NCBI GenBank assembly: GCA_965644315.1
Contig: CBFFRQ010000057.1
Span: forward strand, 496,001 to 560,000
Direction of reading: 5' to 3'
Length of the DNA: 64,000 bases
DNA from: Caecitellus pseudoparvulus
Lineage: Eukaryota; Protista; Bigyra: Bicosoecida
Both the position numbers and the translations under genes were made by a program. Each line of letters opens with the position of its first letter. Position 1 is the first letter of the stretch. Shown here one piece after another: positions 18,390 through 60,977 of the stretch. Under the pieces are notes generated by a model. The model did not search any database. It had not been told where the DNA came from and saw only the letters and a program-made list of their open reading frames with translations.

Positions 18390-18428
18390 CCCCCACCCTG
18401 AAATGCACATGCGTGGCAGAGGCGGGCC

Positions 18429-20676: not shown

Positions 20677-21099
20677 ATTCGGCAGTGCATCGACGTGGTC
20701 AGGGGTCGTCAGTATGGGTCAGTTGGTTTGAATTTGCCTGGAAACTTGCACGGACTTTGACCCATGGACCACACCAAGAAAGGAGAGGGCAGTCATTTCA
20801 GCAAACGCCAAGCCTGGAACACGCAGGACCTTCACAGCTCAAACTGCGCGGCTCTGCCAGCACTCGTGGTCCCTCTCCCAGCCGCCCCAAGTGAGAGCGC
20901 CAGCCCGGTGACTTCGTGCCAGACGCAACAAAGTCCGCTACCGACACGCCTTCAACCTGCAAGCACCGTGCACAACGATCGCTGTTTCTGCCACGTGCAG
21001 CATGCTCCCTGCTCGTTGGGGTCTTACCGCGCTGGGCCCACGCCCTTGACGAGCGGGTCCGAGCAGGCCATGGGGAGCATTGTCGCCCACAGCGCTTGG

Positions 21100-21618: not shown

Positions 21619-22229
21619 GTTTGATTACTGATGCACTTCTAGCAAGCTCGTCGGCATGAGGGTAGCCTCCTCCACGCGGCCTTCGCTCTTTATATGGCGG
21701 TGGTGTCTCAGTGTTTGGCGTGGTGCGGATTTTGAGCCAGCGACAGGCAGCTCCACTTGCTGTGACGCGTCAACAAGAGTGCACCGTAAAGACTCGGTGA
21801 ACCTCGAATCGCAGGGTGTTTTGACTGCTGGCTTTGCACGTGGGGCGACCGGGGGGGGGAATATTGGAGCCAAGCTCCTCGAGTCAGACTGCACACGAGA
21901 CTGGCAAGCATGCAGGCATAGACGTCCGCAGCTTGCAGGTTCAGCTGGTGTAGAGAGCTGTCCAAGTTAACCATGATGCCGTATGCGTGCTGCTACGCTT
22001 TGGAGTAGGCCTCTTCCGAAGCGACACTGCTGTCGTCTCTTCACATCACGTAGGTAGGGCAAGCAGTTGACGTAACCAAGTGCAACATCGCGCTTACCTC
22101 ACAACCAATGCCCTCTGAATGACCTTGCCGCCCTGTCGCCTCCCCACCTGCCGCCAGCAGTGCTGCATCGGGTGCCTCGTGTGCCTGGCCAAGGTTTGTC
22201 GCAAAATCCTAGCTCCACAATCGCCAACC

Positions 22230-28200: not shown

Positions 28201-29522
28201 TTTCTCAGCACGCCTCAGGCAGCATTGAGCTGCAGTGGACGCTGGACTGCGATGGGCGGACCATCTCACTCAGCAGCGTGGTCGTGAAGGGTGGACAAGA
28301 CCTGCTACACCTGGCAACCTGGAGCATTGATGGAATCTGGGACGGGAAAACGCCGCTGCATCCATGTGCAGCAAGCACAGGCAAAGGTGTCTCCGTCTCC
28401 CTTCAGGGGCAGCCAACCGAGGAGGTTCTCAGCTTCCGTGAGTACTCACGGCGCCTGCGACAGGCCCAGATGACAGCGCTGGCAGCAGAAGAGGCCTTGA
28501 TGGGGCAGATCGGTCTTCATGAGGAGCCCGGCATTGCAAACGTTGACAGCGAGTACTCTCAGCAGATTGGGTTGTCGCAAGCTGTGTCTGAGTCTGGCGC
28601 TGCAGCAGCGGGCGCTGACACGTCCAGCATGAAGAGGGTGCCGAGAGAATCCGTGAAAGACATCGAACACCTTGGATCAGGCAGCTTTGGCGAAGTCAAA
28701 CTGGTTTCGTGCGACGAATACCCTGGGTTGAGCTTGGCGTGCAAGTTCTTGACGAACGGCAAGACGTTCGATTCCAGCAAGGAGCTGAGCGCCACACTCG
28801 CATTGATGGAAGGCCAGAGCCACCCCAATGTCATTCAGACGCACGCCTTGGTGGAAGACCAAGGAAGTTGTGTTGGCCTGCTCATGGAGTATGCTGCAGG
28901 GGGGAACCTGGCGGACGCAATATTTCCGGGCGAAAGGCCAATGCTTGTGGAGGACGCCGCGAACCCTATTTCATTTGAGCAGCGTTTGGTGTGGAGCATC
29001 CAAATTGCATCGGCCCTCACCAAAGTTCACGAAATGCGGGTATGGCACCGGGACCTGAAGCCCGACAACGTCCTGTTGACGTCTTCCACTGCATCCGAAG
29101 CGCAAGCAAAGCTGTCAGACTTGGGGCAAAGCAAGCTGGCTGCGTCTTTTGCTACCCAACCAACAAATACCACGACGACTCTGATTTATTGCGCCCCAGA
29201 AGGATTTCACGAAATTTGGGGTCCCGCATCAGACGTTTTCCAGCTCGGCCTGACGCTCTACCAACTGCTGACTGGTAGGTACGCCTGGGAGAGCTACCGT
29301 GAATCGCGTGCCTTTCCGCAGTGCATCGTAGGTTTCCTGTTCTCAGCGGAGGATCTGCCAGAGAAGGTTGGCTCTTGGCCTGGGCTTGTCCCCGAGGCGG
29401 TGCGAGACATTGTCAAGAGGTGCTTGGAAGCTGATCGCAGCTTGCGACCCACTGCCCGCGAAGTGGCTAGGGTGCTTGCTCAAGCTCGCGTCAGGCTCCT
29501 CCGCGACGGAAGGGCCAAATGA
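22230..29522 (+). CDS. Giant (~2,300 aa) protein with four HERC2/KEG/Mind-bomb-type SH3-like repeats, a SPRY-like domain and a C-terminal TKL-type protein kinase; N-terminal exons uncertain
   Basis: Repeats FQVGDRV..P.YGWG.V..G.VGTV...V.FP....W at about 25056, 25254, 25440 and 25833. SPRY-like segment about 27800-28410. Kinase LGSGSFGEV/LACK/HRDLKPDN/SDLG/YCAPE at 28662-29480. Probable ATG at 22230 with GTGAGT donors at about 22364 and 22488. Confidence 0.85.
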
Positions 29523-29612
29523 GGCGCACTCAGATGAATACAATGTGGCGTGTGAACTTCGGTGCACATCAGAACAGTGCAGTGTGCGCTGACTGTGCGA
29601 CAGGGCCGCGCT

Positions 29613-38144: not shown

Positions 38145-39281
38145 TCACATGAATGCATTCAAATACAGCCGCGTGCCCTGCATGCTGACATCGCGGCACA
38201 GGACCCCCGCGCACTCCGCCTGCCACAGGTGCTCCTTGGCCAGGGCCAGGGGGATGCCCCAGTCGCTGGCCAGGGACAGCACAGTCACGTACGCCAAGCC
38301 CTGTCCGTCCCGCTGCACACAGGCGGCCGCGCCGTCCTCCAAGGCACGCACGATGCGCCTGCGGGAGGCGGTGTGCGAGAGGGACGTCAGCTGCAGCACC
38401 CGCACGCCGCTGCCGAAGGTGGCGGGTGTCAGTCCGTGGCTGTTCACCAGCGCACACGCCTGGGCGAAGTCAGACGGTGACACCAGCTCCGTGCCGCGCG
38501 CGCGGTTGTACAGGCAGTACAAGTCTGTGAGGGGCAGGATGCCGCCGGCAGTCTTCACCTTGGGCGCGGCAAAGGCGGCCACCTCCCGCGCCAGGGCGGG
38601 CAGGTAGCCCCCCCCCGCCGTGGCGCGGGTGACGGGGTTCACCAGTCCCAAGTTCCGGGAGATGGCCGCCACCTGCCTGCCCTCGCCGTCCTGGGCAGCG
38701 GCGGCCGCAGTGCCCTTGGCCCTGGCCAGCTTGGCTGACACAGACGACGCCATGCCCGCCACCAGGCGTGCGTTGGCCATCAGCGCCTTCACGTCAGCGA
38801 AGGCCTGCGCAGACAGGTCACTGGCGGCCGCCCGGTCCGCGGCTGCCTGCGCGCGGAGGCCAGCGAGGCCTGTGCGCTCGTGCGTCGCCCCTCGGGCTCG
38901 CTTGGCGGGGGGGGGCGCTGCCCACGACCGCCGCTGCACGGCTGTCTGCAGCATGTGCGTGAAGGCTGCGCTGCCGCCGGACTGGAAGCTGAGCTGGACG
39001 TGGCGGCCGCCCTTCAGCGCCACCCGCGCCTTGGGGTGGGAGAACACCATGAAGCCCGGCACTTCGTCCACTTGCTGCACGTCGCCAAGGTGCCAGAACA
39101 CCGCCTTGTCCGGGTGCGTGTACATTAGGCGGTGGGTCGTCAACAACGCCACGCCGCCTCTGTGCTGCTTCGTGTCGCCATCGTAGAGGTCCACGTGCTC
39201 CTGCCGAAGGTGCTGGATTTCATCACGGGACAAGACAGGTTCACCCCCCTTCCCTGTGATGAGGCCCTTCGCAAGGTCCAT
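38145..39281 (-). CDS. VPS36: ESCRT-II subunit VPS36 (GLUE domain + winged helices)
   Basis: VDLYDGD...G...LTTHRL, SHPK, LSF..GG, AFADVKALM..A, LG...PVTR, LTDLYCLYNRARGTELVSP.D, G.LCRD....G...YLN.F. Confidence 0.93.
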   Translation of the reverse strand: MDLAKGLITGKGGEPVLSRDEIQHLRQEHVDLYDGDTKQHRGGVALLTTHRLMYTHPDKAVFWHLGDVQQVDEVPGFMVFSHPKARVALKGGRHVQLSFQSGGSAAFTHMLQTAVQRRSWAAPPPAKRARGATHERTGLAGLRAQAAADRAAASDLSAQAFADVKALMANARLVAGMASSVSAKLARAKGTAAAAAQDGEGRQVAAISRNLGLVNPVTRATAGGGYLPALAREVAAFAAPKVKTAGGILPLTDLYCLYNRARGTELVSPSDFAQACALVNSHGLTPATFGSGVRVLQLTSLSHTASRRRIVRALEDGAAACVQRDGQGLAYVTVLSLASDWGIPLALAKEHLWQAECAGVLCRDVSMQGTRLYLNAFM

Positions 39282-39461
39282 GCACAGGTGGAAGGGGGGG
39301 GGCGAGCGAGACAGGGCGCTGCAAGCAAATTCCGCAGCCGCCTGCACCGCTGCTCAACCCTCCCACGCTGACCTGGAGCGGGCCAACGGGTGTACGGCGC
39401 TGGCGCACACGTCTGCACACAGCTCGCTGCAATTGCATTGTGCAGCACCACGCACATGGCT

Positions 39462-45793: not shown

Positions 45794-48700
45794 TCACAGC
45801 TTGCTGGCTCCAAACACACGCACACTGGCGATGCGCGCCGTCGCTGCCATGCCAGGGGGCGCCTGCTGAATGCGGGCCAAGGCAGCGGGGTCTGTCGGGG
45901 ACAGCATGTGGTTCACACGGTGCTCCACGCGGCACCCCATGCAGCAGCTGAAGAGGTAGCTGCGGCACTGTGCAGTGAGGGAGCCTTGCCGCACACGCTC
46001 AGCCACGCCCCGCTGCGGCTGCAGGCTGCGCGGCGTCACAGCCCCGAAGGGCACCCCACAGCACATGCACGACAGCGTGGACAGCAGGGGGGTTCCACGA
46101 GCAGCCAAGATGAGGGCGGGGTCCCCACGCTGCGCAGCCCCTCGCAGCCGCCAAGGCAGGCAGCACGCCAGCGCCGAGGGGCAGTGCAGCACGATGCACG
46201 AGGCGAAGGACCTGCGCAGGGCCACGGCACACAGGCCGGCGGGGAAGTAGCAGGGGGGGGGCAGGGAGGACCGCTGCAGGTACCGCCAAAGCATCTCGAT
46301 GCGGTAGACGTTCCACGCGCCACGCGACGTGTCCCGGGCGGTTTGGTAGCTGTCCCCCAACACGGCGATGAGGATGTTGAGGAGGATGATGAGGGCGACG
46401 ATGAGGTACAGGGCCATCATGGACACGCCGAGGGTGACGAGGGGCTGCACAGTGGCCTGCCCCGAGTCCACTGCGAAGTCCACGGGCAGCTCCCAGTCCC
46501 CGAACACGCTCCAGAGCAGTGCGGAAATGTCCCCCACCGAGCTGTTGCCGAAGGGTGACACGACGTAGATGGAGATGAGGGGGATGATGAAGGACGCCAC
46601 CACCAGAGCGAACAGCAGCAGGAAAATGAACACGTCCACCATGGAGAACGCTGCACCGTTGGCGATGGTGAAGACGCGCGGGCCCAAGTATGCGCCTGTG
46701 CTCAGGTACTCCAGCAGCAGCGGGTACGAGATGAAGGCGAGGATGATGAGGGTGCCATACGCGAGGATGTCCGTCAAGTAGCCCAAGCACTCCGAGCCGG
46801 TTGTGCGGGACATCCAGGCGACCACCTGGCAAACAGCTGCCAGGGCTGTTAGGGCGTACTTCAACATGTTGGCCTTGGCCAGCAGGAGGCGAAACCGCCC
46901 CGCACCGCCGCCCACTAAATCGGACAGGGCGGCAGACAGCGACCACCAGAACAGCAGCACGCGCAGTCCGATGGAGAGGTCCAAGGAAATGCGATTCGTG
47001 AGGTGCGGCTCGTAGCTGTGCGCCCCTGCCACAGTGCTGCCTCCACTATTGTCGTCGCACGTGAGCATGTCCCGCAAAACGCCTGGCTCTGACGCACAGC
47101 AGGCGTCGTGGTTGGCGAACCCGCCCTCGCTCGTCAGCAGCACAGCTGAGTGCAGGGCTGCGAAGGCGAGTTCGGACATGCCGTACATGGCATGTTTCAC
47201 GGCGGGCGGGAGCAGCGGCGGGGTCGCGGGGCCGTACGCAGCTGTTGACGGGTCCAGCAAGGGCGCTGCCTCCAGGCCTGTGCCGTCGTCGTCGTCGCCA
47301 CCACCCTCCGCCGCAGCCTCCTCTGCTGCCTCCAAAACAGCATCCTCCTCTTCGTCGCTGTCTGAATGCAGCCGGCGCTGGGTGCTGCCCCTCCCGGCCG
47401 CTCCCAGTCGGGACCTGGCGATGACAGAAGCGCTTCGCGTTCCACTGGGTGCTCCAGGCTCCAGCACAGCTTGATGGCGCTCCAGGGCCACGCCAGCTGC
47501 GCCCCCCTCCATATACGCCCGGCTCCAGACATCTTCCGAGACACTGGAGAGCCCGGTGCTGCCTAGCAGGGGGGGCGGCAAACTGCCTGGGTGTGTGCCA
47601 GACAGGGCCGCGGACTGCTGCGACTGGTGAGTCCCCAGGGACGGCCCGTGGAGAGGGGAAAAGCCAGGGGACATCTCCGTGCTAGAGGGGGGCGGCGGGC
47701 GCAGGGGGGAACCAGCGGTGGCAGTTTGGGCGCGCAGGGGAAGGGGGCCCGTGGGGGGCGACACCAGTGGACTGCCCTCCTCACCTTCCCCACGCGCGGC
47801 GTCCCCTGCCGCTTGCCCGCCGCCCTCCTCCCCCTCCCCCTCCTCCTCCTCCTCCTCTACGTCAACCAGGCCCACGAGGCCTGAGAAGGTGCCTGTGCGC
47901 GTGAAGGGTGCTGGCTTGGCCTCCCGCGCCGCCTGCTCCAGGTCGGCGAAGGCTGCCTGCTCCAGGCGCTTCAGGCGCCGAGCCAGGGCGTGCATGCTGG
48001 GGCGGGCCTCGGGGTCCAGGGCCCAGCAGGACGCGATCAAAGATCGCAAGCCAGGCGGGGTGTCCTTGGGCAGGCGGGACTCCAGGGTCATGCCTTCGGC
48101 CACGCTCAGCTTCACCAGCGCCTCGCTGTCGCCACGCCACGGGAGCTGCCCGCCGGTACACATCTCCCACAGCAGCACGCCAAAGGCGTACACGTCAGAG
48201 GCGCGGCTGACCTGCCGGGCTGCGCCCAGTGTCTCCGGGGCACCCCATCGCACCCTGGGCTCCGACGAGGACGGCAAGGTGACGAACTGCAGCGGCTCCA
48301 CACCGGGGCTTGCAGCGGTGCCGCCCAGGGCAAGGGTGGAGTCACTGCGGGCCAGGCGCCGGGTGGGCTTGCCCTCGTTGGTGCCGCTGGGCTGCACCAG
48401 CACGGCGTTGCCCAGGTTCGCCACACAGGCATGCAGGACGGGGCGTGGCGGCAGGCTGGGCGCGTCTGCCCCTGTCTCGCTGCGGGTGCTGTCGGAGCGC
48501 ACGCCCCGTGAGAGGTCAAGCACAGAGTGCCGGCGCACCTTCGCTGCCAAGTGCCCGTGGGCCGTGGCGTCGCCGCCCTGGCTGCTGCCCAGGCCCTGGT
48601 GTTCATCCCAACTGTCGGAACACCGCAGCAGGACATTCGCGCTGCACAGGTCGCAGTGCAGGACGCCGGCATCGTGCAGCACCGCGACGGCGTGTGCGAC

Positions 48701-51700
48701 CTGCCGTCCCAGTCGCATGACGTCGATGAAGGTCCACAGCGGGGCATACGCCACCGCTGCCGCGGCGGCGGGCAGGGTCATGGCGGTGCCGGACGCGAGC
48801 ACTGCCTGCGCTGCCGCCATGTCTGCAGCCGGGATGTCCTGCTGCATGTCTGGCGCCTCCCACCGTACGCCTGCCCACTGCAGGGGCGGGGAGGGCTCAT
48901 GCTGCAGGGCCCGGGCCTTGTGCAAGGAGGCTAGGAAGCGGTCCAGGTTGCCGAGGGGGTAATACCCCATGAGGATGCCTGCCACGCGCACTGCCACCGT
49001 GCGGCCGATGGTAAGCACGCCGCGCTCCTTGGCTGTCTGCAGCGCCTCGCTGGACACCTCGCGCTCTGCCTCCAGCTCCTGACTGGACTGAGCAGCCAGC
49101 GTGGCGCTGCCACGCCGGGAATGCACGGGGGAACGCACCGAGGGCAGGTCCCGCACTGGAGCTGTGATGACGCTGTACACGCGGACGAGCGTGGGGGGCA
49201 GCACACGCAGCAGCTCTTGCATGTTGCCCAGCACGTTCTGCCCACTGCTGTACAGGCGGGCTACGGCGTGCGTGTCCAGCATGTCCCCTCCATCCTCGGC
49301 CCTCTGCGTGGCCAAGGGCGGGGCAGGGGGGGGTGCAGTGGGCGGAGGCGGGGGCGCACCCCGCGCCACGCCCGCAGACTCCGCCGCCTCGCCCCCCTCC
49401 TGCACCGTGTCCAGGGTGCCCCGCATGTGCAGCGACGCTGCCAGGGCGCTCACACCCTTGCGCCACCGAGCACGAGAGCGCGCACGGGAGCGCAGCAGTG
49501 CCCACACCAGCAGACGCGTCCAAGCAGCAAGCTCCGTGACCAGGCTCTGCTCACCAGCCACACGATCCCTGTGCGTACCGCGCCGCAGCTGCAGCGCCGC
49601 CATGGCACCCTGGGCCTCTCCGCCCGCCACGGCTGAGCCGGGGAGCAGGGGGGACAGCGCCGTCCACCACGCAGGCACTGTTCGAAGCATGAACAGGTCC
49701 GAGTGACTGCCCATGGCTGCTTGCTGAGCCCACCCGGGCAGCTGCCCGTCCGCCGTGGCCCACCGAGGGTGAGCCCGCAGCAGCATGGCCTGCGGCGTGA
49801 CAGTGACGGCACGCCCCACCCCGCACAGCGTCAGGTCCAGCTGGGGCAGCACCATCAGCGCCAACTCCTGCGCTGCGGAGCTGAGCATGATGCCCCGCTG
49901 CCCGCTCACAGACCTGACGCCTGCCATGAGCGTGTCGCCCTGTGGCTTGCCGGCGTCGGGGTCCACGAGGCCCTCGCCCTCCCCAAACAGGGCCGCCACC
50001 CGCGCCCGCACTTTGGCCTGCCGAGTCACCTCCATGCGCAACTCGAAGCCCGGGCGCCGGTCTGCTGCAGGGCGGTGCAGGCTGCTCGAAATGCCACTAG
50101 CGTGGGACAGGGCACTGCTGGCGCCGGCGCCCTCTGGTCCCACGGAAGCCTCCTCCGCGAGATCGGACGCCACGCCCCATCGGGAAGAAGTGCTGCTGCT
50201 GACGGAACTGAAGGCGACAGAGGCGCCCTCATCATGCACCTCGTCAGTGGTCTCCACCGGCAGGGCGATGGCCGGGGCCGGCCGCTGCCGCTGCTGCCGC
50301 CGCGTGGCCTCCTTGCGCAAGGCTGCGAAGGCCTTGGCCTCAGGCGCGTTCCAACGCCGCAGCGCTTCCATGGCCCCCAGCAGGCGGGCCCAGTGGATGG
50401 GTGAGATGCTGGCTTCTTGCCTGTCTCGCTCGCGCAGCGCAAACACGTCCAGCGTCGAGCGCACGCCCAGTCCAGCCAAGTTGCGCGTGATGGCTTGTAG
50501 ACGGAAGCGCTGCAGGAACATGGTCAAGTCCGCCAGGGGCCAGCCACCCCCTGCGTCCCTGCTCGCACTTGCATGAAGTGTGGAGGCGCGCAGCTTGGCG
50601 CGCAGCGCTTGCATGCGCGCCCGGCGTGCGGCGCCCAGCTGTAGACGCACCACGCCTTGCACTGCCAGGATCCCCGCTGCCCCCGGCCGGGATAAGCGGC
50701 TGCGAGACGAGGCACCCAAGGACGACCCAACGGTGCTCGAGCGGCCTGCCAAGCGCAGCATGCGAGAAGACAGTCCGGGCGGTGGCGCGGCCTGCGCTGT
50801 GGGGCGCGGTGGCGCGGCACACCACCAACCTCGTGCCGCGGAGGCCTTGCTGAGCTGTGCCCCGGCCTTGGCCTGTCGGGAGGAGTTGAGCCATGCAGAG
50901 AGAAGCGTAGCCTGGGCCTCGCCGTGCAGCCACACGCCGCTGTTCCAGACGTTGCTGATGAGCAGTTGCACGACGTCCAGTGCCAGGAAGCGGCGGCAGC
51001 CTGCTCGAACGGCCAGCTTCAGCATGTTCTTGTGGGTGCCTGAGAACGACAAGCCTGGCAGCTGCAACGCCCAGCCCAGCACATCTCGCGCGTACAGCGG
51101 GTCGAACGGCGTGAACAGGAACGTGCGAGTGATGTTTGTGTGGTACGGTGCCAGCAGCACCGCCAAGGCGGCATCCACAATGGCCCACGCAGGCTCAGCG
51201 GGCGTGAGGAGCCACATGGCAGCTTGCGCCTTCTCCTTCTCCGTCCAGTGAATGCTGACGCTCTCGTCGTGCACCGCGGTGAGCAGCTTGATGGCGAGGC
51301 TCTCGAACACCTCCCCCTGCTGCTGCAGCTCCTCAACGTCGTTCAACACGGACGTCTGCGACAGGGATCCCTGGTCTGCCAAGCGCCGCAGCACGAGCGT
51401 CACCAGCAGAGCCGTGCGCAGGGGCTGCGTCGTGTGGCTCAACAGGGCGATGGCGACGCGGAACTTGCCGTTCACGGCGGCCCACACGATGCGCAGGACG
51501 CGAAGCGCCTCTTGGCACTCAGCAAGCCATCGAGGCTTCTGATGAATCGTGATGCCTGCCGCTGCTCGCGCGTCCTGCAGCGCTTCCTGCCCTGCGACGC
51601 CCGCTGGCGTAGGGGGGCCGCCATGACCCATGGAGTCTTGACTCGTGACGTGCATCAAGTTCCTGGAGCTGGCGGTGTGGGCCACAGCCGCGGCGACGGC

Positions 51701-54700
51701 TTCCGGCGCGGGCGTGGCTGTGGCTGTCGCGGATGGCGCGCCCAGCTCCTCTGCCCTGCGCCGGGCGGCATCCACTTCAGCCTCCAACATGAGCGTCCTA
51801 CCGTCAAAGAACCGGACAAACGCCGTGTACCAGTGCAGCAGCCGCTCCGTCACGAGGCGTGTGGAGGCGTGGGCAGTGGGCAGCACGAAGCGCCGGCCGT
51901 GGTGCTGGGAGCTCGCTGAGCGAGCCGAGGTCAGGCGCAGCGCAGTCGTGTCGAGCGCGTTGCACACTTGCCGGGACAGCAAGTGGAAGGGGTGGGGGTC
52001 CTCCAGCAGCCCGTTCTTCAGCAGGATGTTCACCAGCACCGGGTCGTCCTCCAACCACGCGAAGCTGAGAACGTCAGCCAGCACGACCCGCTCAGACTTG
52101 GGCATGGGCCGCCGCCGTGCCCGCCGTCGCTGGGACAGCACCTCATGGATGAGCGTGTCGCAGTCCCACAGCGCGGACATCTTCAGCCACTCGCGGCCCT
52201 GGCCCTCGTGCAGCGGCTGCCCTGGGCTGGGCGCCAGGCGCCGCAGAATGGACGTGCGCAGGCGAATGGCCGAGGCTGGCGTGTGCGGCACAAAGGAAGC
52301 CTCCACTGCCGCTGCCCCCCCCTCGCCCTTCGCTTCATGCTGCCCGGCGCCCAGCTCGCGCTCCAACGCCAGGAGGCGCTGCGTGCTTTGATCACGGGAC
52401 AGGGATACACCCACCTCCTGCTGAGACTCCAGGTCTGCCTCCAGCCGCCCCACCCTTGCCTGGGCCGCCTGGGCGGTGGGGGCTTTCGGCCTGTTTGAGG
52501 CAGCTTCGTCGGCGCCCAGGAGCTGCAGCACTGCAGGCGCAGGCACGGCTGACGTACCTTGGCGAGAGCCGTACTCAGCCTGCTGAATACGCTCGATGAC
52601 GATGACGCGGCCGACACGCCCCGTGCCCCCACCCGCGCTGGGCGTGCTGCTGTGCAGCAGCCGGACAGCCGCCCGCCCCCACACACCCTGTGACACGCTC
52701 ATACCGGAGTGCGTGCTGGTCAGGCCGCCTCCCCATGCAGCGTTGCTGCCTTGCTGCAAGAAACAGTTGCGCCAGGCGCCATGCCAGACCTCCCCCAAGG
52801 CGCATGACCGCGCACCGCCAGCAGTGGCGAAGCCCGCCTGCACCACAGCCCGCGCCTTGCCCCAGCACTGTGCCATGATGCTGCCGTACTGCGCCAGTAC
52901 CGCGGCATACGTCATGGGCTGCCTCCTGAGCAGCGTGCGTGCCACAAGCCACGCCAGCTTGCAGAATGCGGAGCGGCGCAGAGGAAACAGCGGGTTGGCG
53001 TTGCTGGGGTCTGCCGCACACGCCTGCTGCCACAGGCAGTCCACCAGGATGGGCGGGAAGGTCTCGCTTGGCAGCAGCCACTGGCTGCTCAGAGAGTCCT
53101 GCGACAGCTGCTCCGGCGGCAAGGTCAAGCCGGCGCTGGGCGCCGCCCAAGCAAGCGATGCCGGCACCCCCGGCAAAGGCGTGCGGGCCGCCACCTCCCG
53201 AACAGCCAGCAGAGCCTCGTCCACAGCCAAGCAGGGTGTGGGCAGCTTCGCCAGGGCTTCGGCGCCCTGCCGTGCTGCGGCAAAGGCAGCCACGTGCGCC
53301 GCCGCCCGAGCCCTGCCTGGCGGACCAGCCACGGGCCCGGAGGTCGCTGCGCCTGGCGCATTCCCAGCGTCGTACGCAAGCGACGCCGACACGCCTTCCT
53401 TGACGTACTGAAGCAGCTTTCGCACGAGGGAGCGGGCAGAGGGAGCAAAGGCCACCGAGCCAGAGTACCGGGCCTGGGCCAGAAGGGCACTCCGCTCCAG
53501 GGACAGATCAGCGAGGGTGCTGGCCAGGCCGAAGGTGGCGTTGGCGTAGGCGAGGGCCATGCCGCCTGCTGAGCGTGAGGAGGAATTGCCCATAGCGTCC
53601 AGGTTCTCCCCCCGCGTGTGTGTACCCAGCAGGACAGTGGGACTGCTGGTCATGAGGGAGCCGTTGGCAGACTCCCCAAGGACGGCAGCAGTGTTGCTCC
53701 AGGCGGCTGACGTGCGGGCGACGGCGTCCGAGTACACCGCATCTGCCGCCTCTTCTGAAGCAGACAAGACGTGCTGTGCGCCGCCTCCCACGTGGCTCAG
53801 GGTGGCCGGTCCGACGGCTTCCATGATCAGGCGCCCGTCACGGTCATCGGCGCTGAAGCCGGGGCTCAGCTGCTGGTACGACGTCAGCTGGCTGCTGTGG
53901 TACAGCATGACCAAGTCTGTGAGGTCCCCCCCAATGACAAATCGCACTGCCGCATGCAGGGGCATGATCATCTCAAAGCTCCGGCGGAAGGCAGCAGCCA
54001 CACTGGCGTCGTGCGCAAGCACGGGGGAGTGCCGAGGCAGCGCCAAGTCCCCTGCCGTCACCGGCGCCAAGTATCCCTCGTCCGTCTCTTCTGACGGCTG
54101 CACGTCATCAGACGACAAGTGGACGGCGGCATCCATGACACCCCCTCCGCCCGCATCTGCTCCAAAGGCGCCAATGAGGTGGTCGCCAGAAGCGTCCGGC
54201 GTCGGCGAGGCGTCACCTTCCTCCGGGGTGTCATCCCCCACAGCAGCGCTGTCCAGCCCGTCTCGGCGATTCTGGAAGCCCAGGAGGTGCGCCACCGTGG
54301 GCACATCCACCGCCACATTGGACGAGCCAAATGGGTGCTGGTTGTCCTCGCCAGACGAAAACGTAGAACCCAGGTCGTCAGCGGAGTCGGGGCCGGGTCC
54401 GCCTGAGGGACGGCGGACCCGGCGTCCGGAGCCTGTCATGACCGCCGACGGCCGAATAGGGGTGCCTGGCGTGTCCTCTTCGTCAACAAAGATGAACAGG
54501 GAATGCGTCGTGTCCAGCCCGCTCTCTGTGGGTGTCCAGCATTGAGCAGACAGCCCACCTGAGCTGCCACCGCCGGGTCCGCGGCCATCAGCAGCCTGGC
54601 CCAGGGATGCTGTCAGGGCAGCCAGCACGGAGCGCTGCGTGTCAGGGGGCATGGGGGCGAACCAGTGCGTTGGCAGGGCGGCCATGCGGTCGAGCGGCGG

Positions 54701-57700
54701 CGTGTTGGTCATGCCGATGACTGGCCGAGGGCGGCTGCTCTGAGCATTGACCTGCGCGACGAAGCCATCAGCCCCCTCCGCTGACCCATCCGTGATGATC
54801 CAGGCCTTGCCATCTCCAGCTGCCGCCGCTACCTCCCGGACCAGGTCACGCGTGGCAGAGCCAAGGCGCCCAGCGCGTTGGTCCTGGCTGTCCACCACAC
54901 TGATGAGGGTGCTGGGCACGTCCATGCCAAACAGTGGGGACAACTTGGACTTGCCGTGGCCGAGAGGCATGCCTTGCGCGTCAGCCGCGTGGCTGGCCCC
55001 CCAGTCTGAGCCGATCAGCCACAGGAACAACTGCCTCACGTTGCACCGTGGCCCCACTCGCACAAACGGCACCCACGAGGTGATGAGCCCTGCCACAGTT
55101 GGGTCTGCCACGCCGCGCCGGCCGTCAGCGATGTGGCTGGCCCAGCCGTCTGCCAGGTGGCTGGAAGCCGACTGCAAGCTGTCGGAGATGAAGCTGTCAT
55201 CCAGGAAGGGGATGCGGCCCCAAGCCAGGACACCCGGAGGGGGCGGCGGCAGCGGGGGCAGCTCCACCGTGGACCCCTGGCCATCCGCATACCGCACCTT
55301 AGCACCGGCTGATGCTCGCAGGGCGTAACGGGGCAGGGGAAGACCTGTCCCAGCCTCCCCATGGTGGGGCGTCAGGTGCAGGGCGGTGCACACTGGGTCC
55401 TCCCGCAGCCTGCTGATGGTGGTCGCAGGCAGGGAGCCCGCCACTGCCTGCTTGCTGCGCAGGAGGCGCACTTGCTGCGCGTCTGCGGCATGCCGCCCCG
55501 TCAGCACGTGGGACACCCGCGCGCCGCGCTTGAACAAGAGGGAGGCGACCAGGTGTGGGAAGCATGGCAGCGGCACCGGGAGGGGCGTGCCCAGAGAAGC
55601 CTCGGGCACGGCCTTTAGTGCCCTTGCCACGAGGAGGGGCACGGGGCTGCCATCCACGGCTTGCCGACCGCCTGCATGAGCAAGGCGCTGCCTGCCGCCC
55701 CCTTCTCCTGGAAGGTGCGCAGGCAGCTGCAGCGTCACGGTGAACGGAGCACCCAAGGACACGCTCACCGCTGCGTCGTGGTGCAGTGCGATGCCCATGG
55801 GGTGGGCAGCAGTGTCCAGCAGCTCCATGGGGTCTGCCACGGCGTGGGCCTGCCCCCCATGCACAGCTGACACCAGGTCCTGCTCAAAGCCCCTAGCAGC
55901 AGCGGCGGTGTACACGTTGTCTGCAGAGGTGGCGAGGAAGGATAGCTGGCTGGCGTCAAAGCCAGAATCCAGGAGGAAGCGCAGCGTGCTGAGGCGGCTG
56001 GCGTGCTGCTTCTCCAGCTCGCCTTCCGCTCTGGTGGTTACTGGCACGACAAGGAAGGGCGACGGCTGCGTCGCTGCAGCAGGCTGCTCCGCTGACGTGG
56101 CTACCCGCGCGCCTGGCCCCCCCCTCCCTTTGCCCAGCGTCGCGACGAGGGAGTTCGTGACTTCCAGGAGCCGCCCCCACAGTGCTGACTGCACCCGGGT
56201 CGGCAGAAGGCTGCTCAGGATGCGGTGGAAGCGCACATCCGAAGGCAGTGGGCGGAAGACGACCAACTGCACCTGCACCTGCAGCGCCTCTTGCAGGGCC
56301 TGGGCCGCGTTGGGGGCTCCAGGCGGCGGCAGAGGGCTCATGGGGGTGATGACGGGGATAGCTTGGGGGGGGATGTCTGGGAACATGTCAACATCGTCCA
56401 GGGATGCCAAATACCGCGCGATGCCCCAGTTGCCCGTGCGGAAGGCAATGCTGAGGGCAGAGTCCCCGCTCACCGCCGACCGCACGTTCACGTTGGCACC
56501 CGCCACCTCCACCATGTAGCGTACGAGGGACACCGGCGCACCCCCTGCCATCCCACACACATGCATGAGGGCCGTCCAGTGCTCGGTGCTCGGACCCAGC
56601 AGCCCTGCTGCCTGCTGGTCCAGGCTGCGAAGTTGGTGTTCCAACAGGGCCAGAGGCGCTCCCACCTCGTCGGCAGCACTCTCAAGCCGTGCTGCAAAGG
56701 GTTGGCTCAGTCGCACGGCGATTTGACGGTGCACGGCCTTGGGGAAGAGGGGTTCGGATGGGTCCAGGCCGGCACCCCCCGGCACCCCAGCCGAGTGCGC
56801 GAACGCCTGGCAGCCCGCAGCCAGCAGCGCTCGAGCTGCTCGGATGCGAGCTGCCAGGACTGTCAGGGCATCACTCGGCTTTACTGCTGCGGTGGTGGGC
56901 TGGTGCAGGGGGGGGGCACCAACCTCCCCCTCGCCTGCCAACGCCAGCTCTGTCGCTGCCTCTCCCGGGGCAGGTGAGTGTACCAGCCACGACGCCAGCT
57001 CGGTGTGGGCACCAGTGGAGTCGTGCCCGACGGCCCCTTTGAAGCCCTCTAACAGCCGGCGCACCCGGCGCTGTGACGCCTTCTCCAGCGTCGCGTCCAT
57101 GCGCGCAGCCACTGTGCGGTTTGGGAGGGCCCCCGCCATTCCCTCGTCCAACAGCCCCTGCAGCTGCCCCAGCACCTCTGACGTGCTCACGAACTCCCAC
57201 GCGCTAAGCAATTGGTGCACGATGTCTTTGTGGCCGGAGCGGGCGGCGTGGTACAGAGGCCCCCGGCCATGAGAATCCTGGTGAGCCATACCGCTGCCCT
57301 TCCACGACAGGGGCACTCGCCCCCCAGCGCCGCCGCCGCCGCTGGTCTGCCGAGAGGGCGAGCCGGGCACCTCCGCGCTACTGGCGCCGCCGTCTTGGTC
57401 ATCTGCCGCCGCCACATACATGGTGTGCACGTCGGACGGGAAGAAATCTACTTGTGGGTCGGAGTACACATAGAAATCGAGCAGTTCCTGCACCGCCTCC
57501 TCGTGACCCCCCCTGCAAGCCGCGATGAGGGGGGTCTGCAGTCGCGGGGGCGTGTGGTCCGTCATGGGCGACGTGGCCATGTGGTTGGCTGTCAAGTACA
57601 ACCGTCTATACAGCAGGGGCAGCATGTCGTGCAGTGCGGCCGCATCCCCTGCCGCTGCAGCAGCAGTCATAGCGTTCACCGCTTGCTGCCTCAAGGCGGC

Positions 57701-59229
57701 AATTTGACGCCGCACACCTGCACCTGACGAGGACCCCTCTGCCCGTGCGTCGCCAGACATAGATCCGCTCATGGAGTGCGCTATCGCTTCAAACTCTCCC
57801 TGCGCCGCTTCCAGTGCATCTGACTCACGCAGCGCGTCCTCTCCAGATTGCACGGCTGCCTTCAGGGCCGCCTGTCGTGCGCTCGACGCCATGGACTGTA
57901 GGAGGTCATTGCAGCCTTGCAACACCCCCATGCACTCGCGGATGAAGGGGTTCTCCTCCTCCTGTAGTCCGCCCTGCACACCACCGTGCAGGGCGGCCTG
58001 GCGGGCAGCCATGTCCAGGCCCAATGTGCCCATCTGCAGAGAGGGGATGCGGCAGGAGCCGCCGCCCCCGCCACCGTCCTCCCCACTCGCATCGCTGCCC
58101 GCCTGGTCGTCAGAGTCGGAGCCATGCCTCGAGGTGTCACCATTTCCCTGCCGCCGCAGGGATGCCGCGTGTGACGCGCGCATGCTCTCCGCACGAGCCT
58201 GCTCTCGACACAGCAGCATGCTGCGAGCCGCGACCTCGCTCGTGCCGTCTAGGCGGTCTGTGCCGAGGAAAAGGCCGCGCAGGGACGTGTTGGACTTCAC
58301 GCCCCCGCACAGGTCCACAGTTCCCTTGGACCCCAGCTCCGTATAGGACACACTCAGGTGTTGCAGGTGGCGGTTCGTCACCAGCATGCTGCCCAGCGCT
58401 GCACCGCTAGCAGGCCCCAAGCAGTTACTAGAGAGACGCAGGCGCTCCAGGGTGTTATTGTAGCGAAGGGCCTGGCACATGGCACCCACTCCACTGTCCC
58501 CTAGCCTATTCCCCGTCAGCAGGAGCTCCCGCACACCCCCTCGACGGATACGGGGTGGGGCCCGCTTGCTGCCCTCCTGACAACTGGGGTGGGCTAGCAG
58601 CAGGCATAAGGATGGGACAACATCCGCTGAGAGCTGGTTTCCATCCAGCTGCAGAGAGCTGGTGCCGCTGAGCCCTCCTGAGTATGCAATGGCGGCGGCC
58701 GCGGCACAAATGAAGAGGCCTGGTGGTGGCCAGCAGTTGGTCACAGCCAGTGTGGATGGAGCAAAGGGAGACCCCAGGGCCTGCCAAGCAAGAGAGGTGC
58801 TGGCAGGTGGCAGTTCGCAGCGTTGAAAGCGCAGCATTTCAAGCCTGTGGCGGAGGGGCATGGGTGGTCTGTGTGAGAAAGCGAGCTGGCAGAGCGGTGC
58901 CTGGCCGCGACGCACGATGCAAGGCTCCTGTCTGATGCGCAGGCGGCGTTTCGGGTGCACACAGCATGCAGCACTGCATCCACCAGCTGCGAGGGGCTGT
59001 GATCGGGCCCTCGCAAGGCCCCGACGATGGACAGCTCCGCCAGCGTGCGGGGCAGCGGGGCCAGCTGCAGCTGCTCAACGAGCTCTTGCTGGAACGCGAG
59101 CGACTTGACTCGAAAGAGCAGGGTGCTGGCTGAGGCTTCATATTGCACATGTTTAGGGAACTTGTCAGCGAAGGCTTCCCATGACGCATGCAGCAGCATG
59201 TGCGCGGGGGCGTCCTGGCTTCCTGACAT
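45794..59229 (-). CDS. Giant TRPM-like cation channel (~4,439 aa): LRR - ankyrin - SLOG/MHR1-4 - SAM - TK-like pseudokinase - 6TM channel - TRP box; exons 59229-58961, 58844-45794
   Basis: 13-kb open frame. MHR motifs: PFVRV, PSTLISV, AWIITDG, LDTTHSLFIFVD, WAAVNG, LKLAV...F......Q....VW. Channel motifs: LGPRV, WSVFGD, LLNILIAVL, WNVYR, LPPP. A phase-2 intron at 58960-58845 joins the upstream ATG exon in frame. Confidence 0.9.
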
Positions 59230-59445: not shown

Positions 59446-60977
59446 CTATCCACGGCCCCCTCCCCACCAGAAGCTCACAGAAATGGACGCTGTCTCAGCA
59501 CGCACGTGGTGCCACCAGCCAGGGGGGATGTACAACATTTCACCGGGCTGCAAGTGCACGTAGGTGCAGCTCAAGCCAGGCGCACGTGCACCGCTCCCAT
59601 GCCCCGGCTCCTGCTGCCTCGAATATGGCGCCAAAGTGGCAGTGTTCCACGCCGCCCCACCACATGACGTCAGCGCTGATGAAGCGGTGGGGGGTAGTAA
59701 AAGCACAGTCTTGCAGCCAGCCACCTGCGCGAGAAGGTTGTGTGGCTCGTCAAAGTGCAGGTTGGAGGTGGTGCCTGCCGGCCCCAGCCAGATTTGCTGC
59801 AGCACCTCTGTGTCGCCGTAGCCGCTGACTGTGCGTGGGTGCCACCAGTGCTCTCCCACGCGTACTTCAGGGGCTCCTCCATGAGGCTTCACGCTGTGGT
59901 CACTGTCTGCCCGAGCACGCTTTGCAGCTGGCGGCTGCAGGTGGTGCAGTAAGGCGAGGTCAGGGATGGGAGCAGCCGACTGCAGGGAGGGCACTTGCTG
60001 CACCAGGCAGTGCTGGGCGAGATATTTGATGGGTACGCGCGGCTTTGCGTGGGGACAGGCGTCTGCTGCACACATTTGACCCAGCACAGCAGACGTGGGC
60101 TGTAGGCGCTGCGACCACCCCTCCGCCATGTACGAAGCCCCCTCCTCCACCGGCACAGTTCTGTGCCCCAGCAGTGCATGCCAGAACCTTAGCGAGTGCC
60201 ATTTACCTTGTTGAAAGGCCGGCCAGTGGCCCATGCTGCCCCGGACGACAGCCGGCGCCCCAGCTGCAAGGCAGCGAGATTGGAACTCCAGCGCAGTCGG
60301 GGAGTGCAAGACGGCCACAGGAGAGATCGAGCCTCCCAGCAGTCCAATTGGCAGTGGCCAGTGTGAACAGGTGCAGTGCGCATTCAGGGTGCAGCTGCAG
60401 CTGCATGGGGCCGCAGGGGGCGGCAGGGCTTCCACCAGGCTCTGGGCTACCTCAGCGTCCAGTGCATGCCCCAGCATGCATGCGACATCCAAGGCCTGGA
60501 AAATCGAAAGAAGGGACTGCTCTGGAATGGAACTATCTTTAGACAGTGAAGACAACTGAATGCACACGCGTAGCCTTGCAAACAGGCTGTACAAGTGCCT
60601 CCAACCGGGATGCACCTCCTTCCAATTACCGCAGTGCAGCGCATTCCACGCACATTGCTGCAGGCGGCACAGGGCCGGAAGAAACTGCAGCAATTTGCCT
60701 GTCTCTGCTTGCATAATGTCATTGCTGAGGGTTTGGATGTCGGACAGGCACGCAGCACAACCAGGACCTGAAATACAAGGAAGGCGAGCAGGTACACGCA
60801 CGGCGAGCAGGTGTCCATGCAGCAATGCTCACCTGCCCCGTCACACAGCGCCTGCAAGGGCCCATGAACTCGAGCCGCATGAAGGTCTCGTTCCAAGACA
60901 CTGACTGCTCTTCTCCTTGCCAAGCCCAGGTCGCGGCAGCCTGCCTCCTTCCCGTCTGCCGGCAGCTCGGCAGCCAT
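59446..60977 (-). CDS. KDM8: JmjC-domain hydroxylase JMJD5/KDM8 (one intron near 60767-60832)
   Basis: AWNALHCGNWKEV, HWPA, RTVPVEEG, YLAQH, WLGPAGT.S.LHFD..HNLLAQV.G.K, PGEMLYIPPGWWHHV...S.SVSFWW. Confidence 0.9.

What the first reader, a model, noticed from the sequence alone, without database searches (positions are those of the whole stretch)
47215..50935. SAM + kinase module inserted inside the TRPM scaffold, between MHR4/pre-S1 and S1
The MHR4 end motif (LKLAVRAGCRRFLALDVVQLLISNVWNSG, compare TRPM 'CLKLAV....F.....Q..L...W.G') and the S1 start (PPAVKHAMYGMSELAF, compare 'AP.VKF.....SY..F') are only on the order of 100 aa apart in known TRPMs. Here about 1,240 aa separate them, containing the SAM and kinase domains. 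This is an internal insertion at the membrane-proximal pre-S1 region rather than a terminal fusion. It would place four SAM/kinase units next to the voltage-sensor-like domain, and SAM polymerisation could cluster channels (inference).
Basis: partly seen in the sequence, partly recalled or inferred. Interest (0 to 1): 0.8.

Follow-up and report, generated by a model that had tools for sequence, protein, structure and literature searches.

The report
Kinase module inside a TRPM-like channel
A giant ion-channel gene of an uncultured marine microbe carries a roughly 1,240-residue block, holding a small SAM-like domain and a degenerate protein kinase, inserted in the cytoplasmic loop just before the channel's first membrane helix; known channel-enzymes of this family carry their enzyme at the C-terminal end.

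Summary
One uninterrupted 4,388-codon frame (45794-58960, minus strand) encodes LRR, ankyrin, a SLOG-like region, MHR3/4, the insert, S1-S6 with TRP helix, and a Cys-rich tail.

- **Flanks are TRPM-type.** Profile comparison with 23 TRPM-like proteins aligns aa 2210-2691 to MHR3/4 (E 3.9e-11; TRPC control 0.11; reversed 0.52). It aligns aa 3891-4249 to S1 through the TRP helix (E 8e-21).
- **The spacing is exceptional.** They lie 48-133 residues apart in 22 relatives and 395 in one. Here the distance is 1,249, and 1,464-1,473 in two orthologues.
- **The insert is coding.** The frame is open in orthologues from two other species. Strain differences are mostly synonymous, and metatranscriptome contigs cross both borders without joints.
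- **Kinase.** It is a eukaryotic-type domain (Pfam 7e-27). It lacks a glycine loop and the beta3 lysine, and reads NLG in place of DFG, so it is probably a pseudokinase here.
- **SAM.** This is supported only at fold level from a low-confidence model; no sequence profile detects it.
- **Origin and function.** No relative without the insert was found. Clustering of channels by SAM polymers is untested.

First readers noted this same stretch before; the scan has not reported it on other DNA.

The parts
45794..58960 (-). Whole open reading frame, 4,388 aa plus stop: the giant TRPM-like channel subunit
   Evidence: 99% identical proteins P0001/P0152 and colinear orthologues P0154 (4,848 aa) and P0002 (2,585 aa; its contig ends within 1.7 kb upstream, so probably incomplete).
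56399..58678 (-). N-terminal LRR (RNI-like) and ankyrin repeat region, aa about 95-854
   Evidence: Pfam LRR_6, Ank, Ank_2, Ank_3; the same families in P0154.
54482..54952 (-). SLOG (MHR1/2)-like core, aa about 1337-1493
   Evidence: Pfam LSDAT_euk below cut-off (E 0.053 here, 0.023 in P0154). hhalign E 2.3e-4 to the SLOG of TRPM-like proteins, against 0.46 for TRPC and 0.52 reversed. The top PDB profile hits are human TRPM2, with three colinear motifs.
50888..52333 (-). MHR3/4 homology region, aa 2210-2691, ending in the LKLAV...Q..L...W.G motif (aa 2647-2675, window 50936-51022)
   Evidence: hhalign probability 97.2%, E 3.9e-11 against the TRPM-like alignment; E 0.11 against the TRPC-like alignment. 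TRPM7 chains are the top PDB hits with two colinear pieces. 67-83% identical to P0154.
47215..50935 (-).
   Evidence: Spacing of 1,249 aa against 48-133 in 22 relatives and 395 in one. No segment hydrophobic enough for a membrane helix.
50546..50935 (-). Linker 1, aa 2676-2805: low-complexity Ala/Ser/Arg-rich stretch ending in a basic helix (about aa 2765-2795)
   Evidence: Orthologue alignment; helix 2-23 in the 111-aa model at low confidence; flat codon-position GC.
50345..50545 (-). SAM-like helical domain, aa 2806-2872
   Evidence: No Pfam or PDB sequence hit. Language-model features are nearest SAM_1/SAM_2 at 0.86. A trimmed AF2 model has pLDDT 67. The Foldseek PDB list is almost all SAM domains (best E 0.57, TM 0.5-0.64). 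A search of 48,161 chains is led by tankyrase, liprin, Sans, Scm and SARM1 SAM domains (Z 5.6-6.3, rmsd 2.5-3.3 A, 61-72 of 74 residues).
49361..50083 (-). Conserved middle region of unknown fold, aa 2960-3200
   Evidence: Conserved blocks in P0002 and P0154. No Pfam family. No paralogue in the genome. The atlas feature hit to FhuF has low recognition and was discounted.
47957..49279 (-). Eukaryotic-type protein kinase domain with long inserts, aa about 3228-3668; degenerate N-lobe
   Evidence: PF07714 E 6.9e-27 and PF00069 E 3.9e-16. PDB hits to the TYK2 pseudokinase-kinase chain, PTK6, ROS1, MLK1, ACK1 and FAK cover mainly the C-lobe. Motif states: no glycine loop; beta3 K replaced by R here and D in the orthologues; HCD/HND; NLG here and DLG in the orthologues; APE kept.
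47216..47956 (-). Linker 3, aa 3669-3915: acidic and Ser/Pro-rich low-complexity stretch leading to the pre-S1 segment
   Evidence: Orthologue alignment. A metatranscriptome contig at 47002-47270 runs across its junction with S1.
46214..47209 (-). S1-S6 channel domain with pore and TRP helix, aa 3918-4249
   Evidence: PDB phmmer hits TRPM7, TRPC3 and TRPM3 at E 4e-9 and weaker. hhalign E 8e-21 to TRPM-like and 2.1e-19 to TRPC-like alignments. Hydrophobic peaks at S4, S5 and S6.
45797..46213 (-). Cys-rich C-terminal tail, aa 4250-4388
   Evidence: Translation; many invariant Cys in three orthologues. No TRPM_tetra or other Pfam hit.

Best explanation
Shown: the ORF encodes one subunit of a lineage-specific TRPM-type cation channel. 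Its cytoplasmic loop between the end of MHR4 (pre-S1 elbow region) and the pre-S1 helix/S1 has been expanded from the usual 50-130 residues to about 1,240.

The expansion is a conserved module with these parts, in order:
- a basic low-complexity linker;
- a small SAM-fold domain;
- a roughly 240-aa conserved region of unknown fold;
- a eukaryotic-type TK/TKL-like kinase domain with long inserts;
- an acidic Ser/Pro-rich linker.

The whole is translated as one frame and is kept in at least three related marine species.

Inferred: the channel assembles as a tetramer like other TRPMs. The loop is cytoplasmic, and no membrane helix lies in the insert, so four copies of the module would hang at the periphery of the S1-S4 domain, next to the TRP helix.

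The kinase lacks the glycine loop and the beta3 lysine in all three species, and has NLG for DFG in this one. It therefore most likely acts as a pseudokinase: a nucleotide- or partner-binding regulatory scaffold whose conformation or docking modulates gating. The SAM-like domain would supply protein-protein contacts, either between subunits or to partners. This is a regulatory module built into the gating periphery, not a catalytic tail as in TRPM6/7.
For: - Continuous frame of 4,388 codons. The chance of the 1,240-codon insert being open is about 1e-10, with 14-16 stops in the other frames and the same GC3>GC1>GC2 pattern as the flanks.
- MHR3/4 profile match E 3.9e-11 and TM match E 8e-21. 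Reversed controls 0.44-0.52. TRPC-like control for MHR3/4 E 0.11.
- SLOG: hhalign E 2.3e-4; top PDB hits are TRPM2, with three colinear motifs.
- Spacing between the two motifs is 48-133 aa in 22 relatives and 395 in one. It is 1,249 here, 1,473 in P0002 and 1,464 in P0154.
- Orthologues are colinear across the insert: P0002 34% and P0154 38% identity there. The fragment P0003 also joins the kinase C-lobe to the TM domain.
- Strain differences inside the insert: 19 synonymous against 11 non-synonymous, with 21 of 30 at codon position 3.
- Metatranscriptome contigs are colinear over 47002-47270 and 50647-51016, which are both borders, with no joints.
- Kinase: Pfam E 6.9e-27; motif states.
- SAM fold.
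- No TM-grade hydrophobic segment in the insert.
Against: - The SLOG evidence is weak: Pfam gives 13-14 bits against a cut-off of 25.7.
- SAM is not detected by any sequence profile, and the model has pLDDT of only 67.
- RNA support is three short contigs from one metatranscriptome, which could contain DNA.
- Nothing shows that the protein stays in one piece, tetramerises or conducts ions.
- The orthologues keep HxD, the catalytic-loop Asn, DLG and APE, so residual or atypical kinase activity cannot be excluded. This argues against 'pseudokinase' for the family as a whole.
- No TRPM C-terminal coiled coil was found.
Confidence: 0.75

Rival explanations
1. The insert, or a large part of it, is not in the mature protein: it is an intron read through in frame, or the ORF is an assembly or gene-model fusion of two neighbouring genes.
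For: High-GC genomes give long chance ORFs; antisense and other-frame ORFs of 400 aa and more occur in this window. Linker 1 (aa 2676-2805) has a flat codon-position GC profile. RNA evidence is thin.
Against: - The chance of an open frame is about 1e-10.
- The same order and an open frame occur on independent contigs of two other species, with conserved blocks inside the insert.
- Synonymous differences are in excess.
- RNA contigs cross both borders with no joints.
- A bona fide kinase domain lies in the same frame.
Confidence: 0.04
2. The channel is a generic TRP of the TRPC/TRPM group rather than a TRPM. The N-terminal 'MHR' similarity would then be only the linker-helical motif shared with TRPC, so 'inside the TRPM scaffold' overstates the case.
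For: The TM domain matches TRPC-like and TRPM-like profiles about equally (2.1e-19 against 8e-21). Single-sequence Pfam hits to LSDAT_euk and the TRPM2 domain are below cut-off. The protein also carries ankyrin repeats, as TRPC does.
Against: - The MHR3/4 profile match is TRPM-specific (3.9e-11 against 0.11 for TRPC).
- The SLOG core matches TRPM-like proteins (2.3e-4) and not TRPC (0.46).
- Each of the three regions, searched separately, has a TRPM chain as its top PDB hit.
- The ankyrin repeats lie far upstream of the SLOG region.
Confidence: 0.07
3. One gene but two functional products. An internal start or proteolysis in the disordered linkers would separate a soluble LRR-Ank-SLOG-MHR-SAM-kinase protein from a short TRP channel, so the module would not be physically inside an assembled scaffold.
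For: Three long low-complexity linkers are plausible cleavage sites.
Against: MHR4 and S1 are normally contiguous and pack together in TRPM structures (established knowledge of TRPM cryo-EM structures). An RNA contig runs from linker 3 into S1. No evidence for an internal promoter was found, but none was sought.
Confidence: 0.1
4. The kinase is active in an atypical way, with a relocated lysine as in WNK kinases, making this a true channel-kinase that phosphorylates itself or its partners.
For: The catalytic Asp, the catalytic-loop Asn and APE are kept in all three species, and DLG is kept in two. The C-lobe is the best-conserved part of the insert, at 53-55% identity to P0154.
Against: No glycine loop is present. 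The beta3 position is R here and D in the orthologues. In this species the DFG Asp is Asn. The closest PDB match includes the TYK2 pseudokinase-kinase chain.
Confidence: 0.2

Closest known systems
TRPM6/TRPM7 channel-kinases (vertebrates)
   Same: A TRPM-type channel covalently joined to a kinase domain. The TM domain's best PDB hit is TRPM7 (E 4e-9), and the MHR4-end motif aligns with TRPM7 residues 719-748.
   Different: In TRPM6/7 the kinase is an atypical alpha-kinase added at the C-terminus in a vertebrate ancestor (PMC13143021, read). Here it is a eukaryotic-type (PF07714) and probably inactive kinase placed internally, before S1, together with a SAM-like domain. No alpha-kinase and no C-terminal coiled coil were found.
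TRPM2 and choanoflagellate/cnidarian TRPM2 chanzymes (NUDT9-H)
   Same: A TRPM scaffold with a SLOG N-terminus. The SLOG profile's top PDB hits are human TRPM2, and chanzyme chains appear among the TM hits.
   Different: Their enzyme domain is a C-terminal Nudix hydrolase. No Nudix domain is present here. The glycine motifs of the SLOG core are replaced (about aa 1354-1396).
TRPM-like proteins of Physarum polycephalum and animals (P0006, P0019, P0037, P0056, P0053)
   Same: They are the nearest distant relatives of the TM domain (E 1e-10 to 1e-5), with the order SLOG, TRPM2 domain, channel.
   Different: Their loop from MHR4 to S1 is 48-133 aa, and 395 aa without a recognised domain in the Gordionus TRPM3-like protein. 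None carries a kinase or SAM domain there.
Eph receptors and other proteins that combine a kinase with a SAM domain
   Same: A TK-like kinase and a SAM fold in one polypeptide. EphA kinase and SAM chains appear in both hit lists.
   Different: In Eph receptors the SAM domain follows the kinase at the C-terminus of a single-pass receptor. Here the SAM-like domain comes about 350 aa before the kinase, and both sit inside a channel subunit. There is no sign of common descent as a module: the genome has no paralogue of the SAM plus middle region.

Membership tests
TRPM (melastatin TRP channels) | N-terminal SLOG/LSDAT domain (MHR1/2) | tested here: inconclusive
   Pfam LSDAT_euk scores 13.3 bits (E 0.053) here and 14.5 bits (E 0.023) in P0154, below the 25.7-bit cut-off. 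hhalign E 2.3e-4 to the right part of TRPM-like proteins, with controls at 0.46-0.52. The top PDB hits are TRPM2 at E 0.12, with three colinear motifs. This leans towards met.
TRPM (melastatin TRP channels) | MHR3/4 helical region (Pfam TRPM2-like domain) ending in the ...LA....F.....Q..L...W.G motif | tested here: met
   hhalign probability 97.2%, E 3.9e-11 over aa 2210-2691. TRPC-like control E 0.11 and reversed control 0.52. Pfam on single sequences gives only E 0.09-0.15.
TRPM (melastatin TRP channels) | Six-helix TRP channel domain with pore loop and TRP helix after S6 | tested here: met
   PDB phmmer hit to TRPM7 at E 4e-9, covering the stretch from about S4 through S6, the TRP helix Trp and the PPP motif. 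hhalign E 8e-21 from S1 to the TRP helix. This feature does not separate TRPM from TRPC.
TRPM (melastatin TRP channels) | C-terminal coiled-coil tetramerisation domain | tested here: not met
   No TRPM_tetra or other coiled-coil family in the Pfam scan of the whole ORF at E<=1. The tail is Cys-rich instead. I did not check whether the distant TRPM-like relatives have this domain.
TRPM6/7-type channel-kinase | Alpha-kinase domain at the C-terminus | tested here: not met
   The only kinase families found are PF07714 and PF00069, at aa about 3228-3668, upstream of S1.
Eukaryotic protein kinase superfamily (TK/TKL-like) | Domain match above the curated cut-off | tested here: met
   PF07714 scores 94.8 bits against a cut-off of 23.1; PF00069 scores 59.7 against 31.7. 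There are 998 PDB kinase chains at E<=0.001.
Eukaryotic protein kinase superfamily (TK/TKL-like) | Catalytic residues: glycine loop, beta3 Lys, HRD Asp, DFG Asp | tested here: not met
   Read from the orthologue alignment. There is no glycine loop, and the beta3 position is R here and D in the orthologues. HCD/HND keeps the Asp. DFG reads NLG in this species and DLG in P0002 and P0154. The assignment of beta3 was made by eye and not from a structure.
SAM (sterile alpha motif) domain | Sequence-profile match to SAM_1/SAM_2/SAM_PNT | tested here: not met
   No Pfam family at E<=10 for this species or for the P0002 and P0154 segments. No PDB chain at E<=10 with a two-sequence profile.
SAM (sterile alpha motif) domain | Compact helical bundle of about 65-70 aa with a long C-terminal helix, superposable on solved SAM domains | tested here: inconclusive
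   The trimmed AF2 model has pLDDT 66.8 and four helices. Its best matches among 48,161 chains are SAM domains at Z 5.6-6.3, rmsd 2.5-3.3 A, over 61-72 of 74 residues, and SAM domains are the most frequent fold among the 50 listed matches. The Foldseek list is nearly all SAM domains but E>=0.57. Z under 8 can arise from common helical arrangements, and the longer 111-aa model gave no SAM match.

The most novel reading that the evidence does not exclude
This would be a third, independently evolved kind of TRPM 'chanzyme'. A eukaryotic-type kinase or pseudokinase with a SAM domain is wired into the pre-S1 loop, so that nucleotide binding, phosphorylation or SAM-mediated oligomerisation acts directly on the S1-S4/TRP-helix gating periphery, or arrays channels into clusters. 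That would be a gating or clustering principle not described for any TRP channel.
Probability: 0.25. Interest if true: 0.8.

Novelty: new variant of a known kind. Interest (0 to 1): 0.6.

Why it matters
Channel-enzyme fusions (TRPM2, TRPM6/7) are the textbook cases of an enzyme domain controlling, or being controlled by, an ion channel, and in both the enzyme is a C-terminal appendage. A natural TRPM-type channel that tolerates a module of about 1,240 residues in the pre-S1 loop shows that this loop is a permissive site.

It also offers a natural experiment on how a folded domain next to the S1-S4 bundle influences gating. It extends SLOG-bearing TRPM-like channels to an uncultured marine protist lineage. 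Finally, it points to a site that could be used for engineering sensor domains into TRP channels. The limits are that the organism is uncultured and that nothing functional is known.

Tried and rejected
- **Metagenome scans.** Two JGI metagenome scans, with TM-domain alignments A3 and A4, found no further orthologues.
- **SLOG word search.** A word-indexed search with the SLOG piece alone found nothing within its length band, so the SLOG profile stayed at two sequences.
- **First SAM model.** It was 111 aa and included flanking helices (pLDDT 63). It gave only generic helical-bundle matches. The SAM signal appeared only after trimming to 74 aa.
- **Middle region.** Atlas features for aa 2960-3200 pointed to bacterial FhuF-like proteins at low recognition (1428). 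I regard this as a composition artefact.
- **Paralogues in the same genome.** The only other SLOG match (contig C65) is a WD40 plus LSDAT_prok protein unrelated to the channel. The TM domain and the SAM plus middle region have no paralogue. Kinase paralogues match only the C-lobe at 31-42% identity. No donor gene or insert-free copy could therefore be named.
- **Exhaustive search.** The TM domain against 1.84 billion representatives gave only 174 hits at E<=0.001, and no close relative without the insert.
- **Single-sequence comparisons.** MHR3/4 against individual TRPM or TRPC proteins gave weak results (E 0.004-0.037); only the family profile is decisive.
- **Organism identity.** Vps36 from the window has no named close relative: beyond the near-identical hit (99%), the best are unnamed metagenome proteins at 43% and an MMETSP transcript at 33%.
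- **Literature.** Searches found no description of a TRP channel with an internal eukaryotic-type kinase or SAM domain.
- **Not run.** I did not run complex prediction on SAM self-association.

Full report
**1. What is at the coordinates**

The window is about 68% G+C. It holds one uninterrupted reading frame on the minus strand, 45794..58960, of 4,388 codons. The finding's interval, 47215-50935, corresponds to aa 2676-3915 of that frame.
- The second motif, PPAVKH..., starts at aa 3918, just after the interval.
- The distance from the W of the first motif to the V of VKH is 1,249 aa.

**2. Are the flanks really MHR4 and S1 of a TRPM?**

Single-sequence searches are weak upstream of the insert and clear downstream.
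- The C-terminal 499 aa hit TRPM7, TRPC3, TRPM3 and TRPM2 chains in the PDB, best E 4e-9. The TRPM7 alignment covers roughly S4 through S6, the TRP helix and the PPP motif.
- Pfam gives only sub-threshold hits upstream: LSDAT_euk ('SLOG in TRPM') at E 0.053 near aa 1377-1407, and the TRPM2-like domain at E 0.09 near aa 2480-2567. The orthologue P0154 gives the same two at the equivalent places.

I therefore ran an exhaustive search of 1.84 billion representatives with the TM region.
- Only 174 proteins reached E<=0.001.
- Of the eight long hits I scanned with Pfam, six carry the TRPM-specific TRPM2-like domain with Ion_trans, and five of those also carry LSDAT_euk. One is TRPC-like and one shows only Ion_trans.
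- These hits include Physarum, Ciona and Gordionus proteins.

I aligned 23 TRPM-like hits and compared the alignment with small profiles of our protein and its orthologues, using hhalign.
- aa 2210-2691 align to MHR3/4 with probability 97.2% and E 3.9e-11.
- aa 3891-4249 align from S1 to the TRP helix with probability 99.3% and E 8e-21. VKH falls in the family's 'VKF' column at the start of S1.

Controls:
- Reversed queries give E 0.44-0.52.
- A 21-sequence TRPC-like alignment gives E 0.11 for the MHR3/4 block but 2.1e-19 for the TM block. The TM domain therefore does not separate TRPM from TRPC, whereas the N-terminal region is specifically TRPM-type.

The SLOG core is weaker.
- hhalign gives E 2.3e-4 to the right part of the TRPM-like alignment, against 0.46 for TRPC.
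- A two-sequence profile against the whole PDB puts human TRPM2 first at E 0.12. Three hallmark blocks are colinear: the strand followed by the AWIIT.GS..G motif, the (D/N)HS.F(I/L)(F/L)VD block, and the ...EGSG block.
- Each of the three regions, searched separately, has a TRPM chain as its top PDB hit.

I regard the TRPM scaffold as established, with the SLOG part diverged.

**3. Is the spacing unusual?**

In the 23-sequence alignment, the W column of the MHR4-end motif and the VKF column of S1 are 48-133 residues apart in 22 proteins. They are 395 apart in the Gordionus TRPM3-like protein, which has no recognised domain there. Here the distance is 1,249. It is 1,247 in the near-identical P0001 and P0152, 1,473 in P0002 and 1,464 in P0154. 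In detail: this is an internal expansion of roughly 1,100-1,400 residues at one loop.

**4. Is the insert coding?**

- At its own base composition, 1,240 open codons have a chance of about 1e-10. The other two frames of the same strand hold 14 and 16 stops.
- Codon-position G+C follows the same GC3>GC1>GC2 pattern as the flanks. The exception is the first low-complexity linker, which is flat.
- Orthologues from independent contigs keep the frame and the order of parts.
  - P0002 is 2,585 aa, and its contig ends within 1.7 kb upstream of it. It is 55% identical in MHR3/4 and 34% across the insert.
  - P0154 is 4,848 aa on a 101-kb contig, colinear from residue 143 to the end, and 38% identical across the insert.
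  - The fragment P0003 joins the kinase C-lobe to the TM domain.
- Identity to P0154 is 0.67-0.83 in MHR3/4 and 0.6-0.82 in most of the TM domain. It is 0.22-0.55 in the insert, highest in the kinase C-lobe. The module evolves faster but is retained.
- Of the 30 listed differences inside the insert between this sequence and contigs of other strains in marine metagenomes, 21 are at codon position 3. Nineteen are synonymous and 11 are not. Forty-four further differences over the whole 5.8-kb stretch laid were not listed by the tool.
- One metatranscriptome has three short contigs colinear with the genome at 47002-47270 and 50647-51016, which are the two borders of the insert. No run showed a joint. 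This is thin evidence, because DNA can be present in such libraries.
- No segment in the insert or upstream of it is hydrophobic enough for a membrane helix, so the module lies on the same cytoplasmic side as the N-terminus.

**5. What the insert contains**

a. aa 2676-2805: an Ala/Ser/Arg-rich linker ending in a basic helix.

b. aa 2806-2872: a small helical domain conserved in the three species.
- No Pfam family at E<=10 in any of the three, and no PDB sequence hit.
- Language-model features are nearest to SAM_1/SAM_2 clusters, at 0.86, which is a lead only.
- A first 111-aa model gave no SAM match.
- A trimmed 74-aa model (pLDDT 66.8) gives a Foldseek list that is almost entirely SAM domains, including SLy1, DGK-delta, EphA1/2/7/8, SARM1 and Shank2. 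Best E is 0.57 and TM scores are 0.5-0.64.
- A Foldseek-independent search of 48,161 chains is led by tankyrase, liprin, Sans, Scm/Sfmbt, BICC1 and SARM1 SAM domains (Z 5.6-6.3, rmsd 2.5-3.3 A, 61-72 of 74 residues). SAM domains are the most frequent fold in the top 50.
- I put the SAM fold at about 0.8. Membership of the SAM family by sequence is not shown.

c. aa 2960-3200: conserved blocks without a recognised family.

d. aa about 3228-3668: a eukaryotic-type kinase, with PF07714 at E 6.9e-27. PDB matches to TYK2, PTK6, ROS1, MLK1, ACK1 and FAK cover mainly the C-lobe. In the three-species alignment:
- there is no glycine loop;
- the position I read as beta3 Lys is R here and D in the orthologues;
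- HRD reads HCD or HND;
- DFG reads NLG here and DLG in the orthologues;
- APE and the C-lobe are kept.

This species' domain is probably inactive. The family may be atypical rather than dead.

e. aa 3669-3915: an acidic Ser/Pro-rich linker. It ends in a short conserved pre-S1 segment, which reads ...LFAPAVKH in the orthologues.

**6. Origin**

- The genome is 30.6 Mb in 215 contigs. It holds no second copy of the TM domain or of the SAM plus middle region.
- Other kinases in the genome match only the C-lobe, at 31-42% identity.
- The only other SLOG match is an unrelated WD40 plus LSDAT_prok protein.
- No relative without the insert was found in the exhaustive search or in JGI metagenomes.
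- The insertion therefore predates the split of the three sampled species. It cannot be dated further with these data.
- The organism is an uncultured marine eukaryote: its DNA is held by marine metagenome runs. Its Vps36 has no close named relative.

**7. How it most likely works**

Shown: the architecture, and that it is coding and conserved.

From established knowledge of TRPM structures: the loop after the MHR4-end motif leads through the pre-S1 elbow and helix to S1, at the cytoplasmic face on the outer rim of the S1-S4 bundle, close to the TRP helix. Part of that loop is disordered in several solved TRPMs.

Inferred: a tetramer would carry four SAM plus pseudokinase modules on long flexible linkers at that rim.
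- The most economical role is regulatory. A pseudokinase would bind a nucleotide or a partner, and a SAM-fold domain would mediate subunit or partner contacts, tuning gating or localisation.
- SAM-driven polymerisation of channels is possible but untested.

**8. Comparison with what is known**

- The known TRPM enzyme fusions are C-terminal. These are NUDT9-H in TRPM2-type channels and an alpha-kinase in TRPM6/7, the latter described as added once to the vertebrate TRPM6/7 ancestor (PMC13143021).
- Four literature searches found no TRP channel with an internal eukaryotic-type kinase or SAM domain. The library is not exhaustive.
- I class this as a new variant of a known kind: a TRPM-type channel with a covalently attached enzyme-like domain. 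It differs in the type of kinase, in its position, and in the accompanying SAM-like domain.

**9. Verdict**

'SAM' is probable at fold level only, the kinase is probably a pseudokinase in this species, and the function is inferred. First readers of this scan had already noted the same stretch.

Noticed in passing
G000 contig C65:182735-188494 (L006:2735-8494, minus): A 1,919-aa ORF combining an N-terminal WD40 propeller with a C-terminal prokaryote-type SLOG domain (LSDAT_prok E 3.4e-36). It has no channel domain and is unrelated to the TRPM-like gene.
   Followed up: partly
P0053 (Gordionus sp. TRPM3-like, 2,030 aa), residues about 1100-1490: An animal TRPM with about 395 residues between the MHR4-end motif and S1, against 48-133 in other relatives. 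No Pfam domain lies there, which shows that the same loop tolerates expansion elsewhere.
   Followed up: partly
window 50576-50668 (aa about 2765-2795): A basic helix just upstream of the SAM-like domain, rich in R, Q and L (VRLQ...RRAR...LRAKLR here; LQRLQRLAR in the orthologues). It resembles an IQ-type or calmodulin-binding helix, or a short coiled coil. No Pfam hit.
   Followed up: no
window 45797-46213 (aa 4250-4388): The tail after the TRP helix is Cys-rich, with CC, CMCCG and GC clusters, many of them invariant in three species. It stands where other TRPMs have a coiled coil. It could be a palmitoylation or metal-binding region.
   Followed up: no
window 46960-47140 (aa about 3940-4000): The S1-S2 loop carries conserved cysteines (F-A-x-x-D-A-C-C-A and T-C) in all three orthologues, which suggests a disulfide-stabilised extracellular loop.
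   Followed up: no
window 54780-54900 (aa about 1354-1396): In the SLOG core, the glycine motifs of TRPM2 (...SVTGGA... and ...TGGS.TG...) read ...SVVDSQD... and ...TDGSAEG.... The nucleotide- or ligand-binding loop therefore looks altered.
   Followed up: partly
window 16000-30000: G+C drops to 0.58-0.62 over about 14 kb, against 0.65-0.73 elsewhere in the window.
   Followed up: no
window 12338-15922 (minus), 38145-39347 (minus), 59446-60825 (minus): Neighbouring ORFs are ordinary eukaryotic genes: a PH plus FH2 formin, a Vps36/EAP30 ESCRT-II subunit and a JmjC/cupin protein. All are single long ORFs, consistent with an intron-poor genome.
   Followed up: partly
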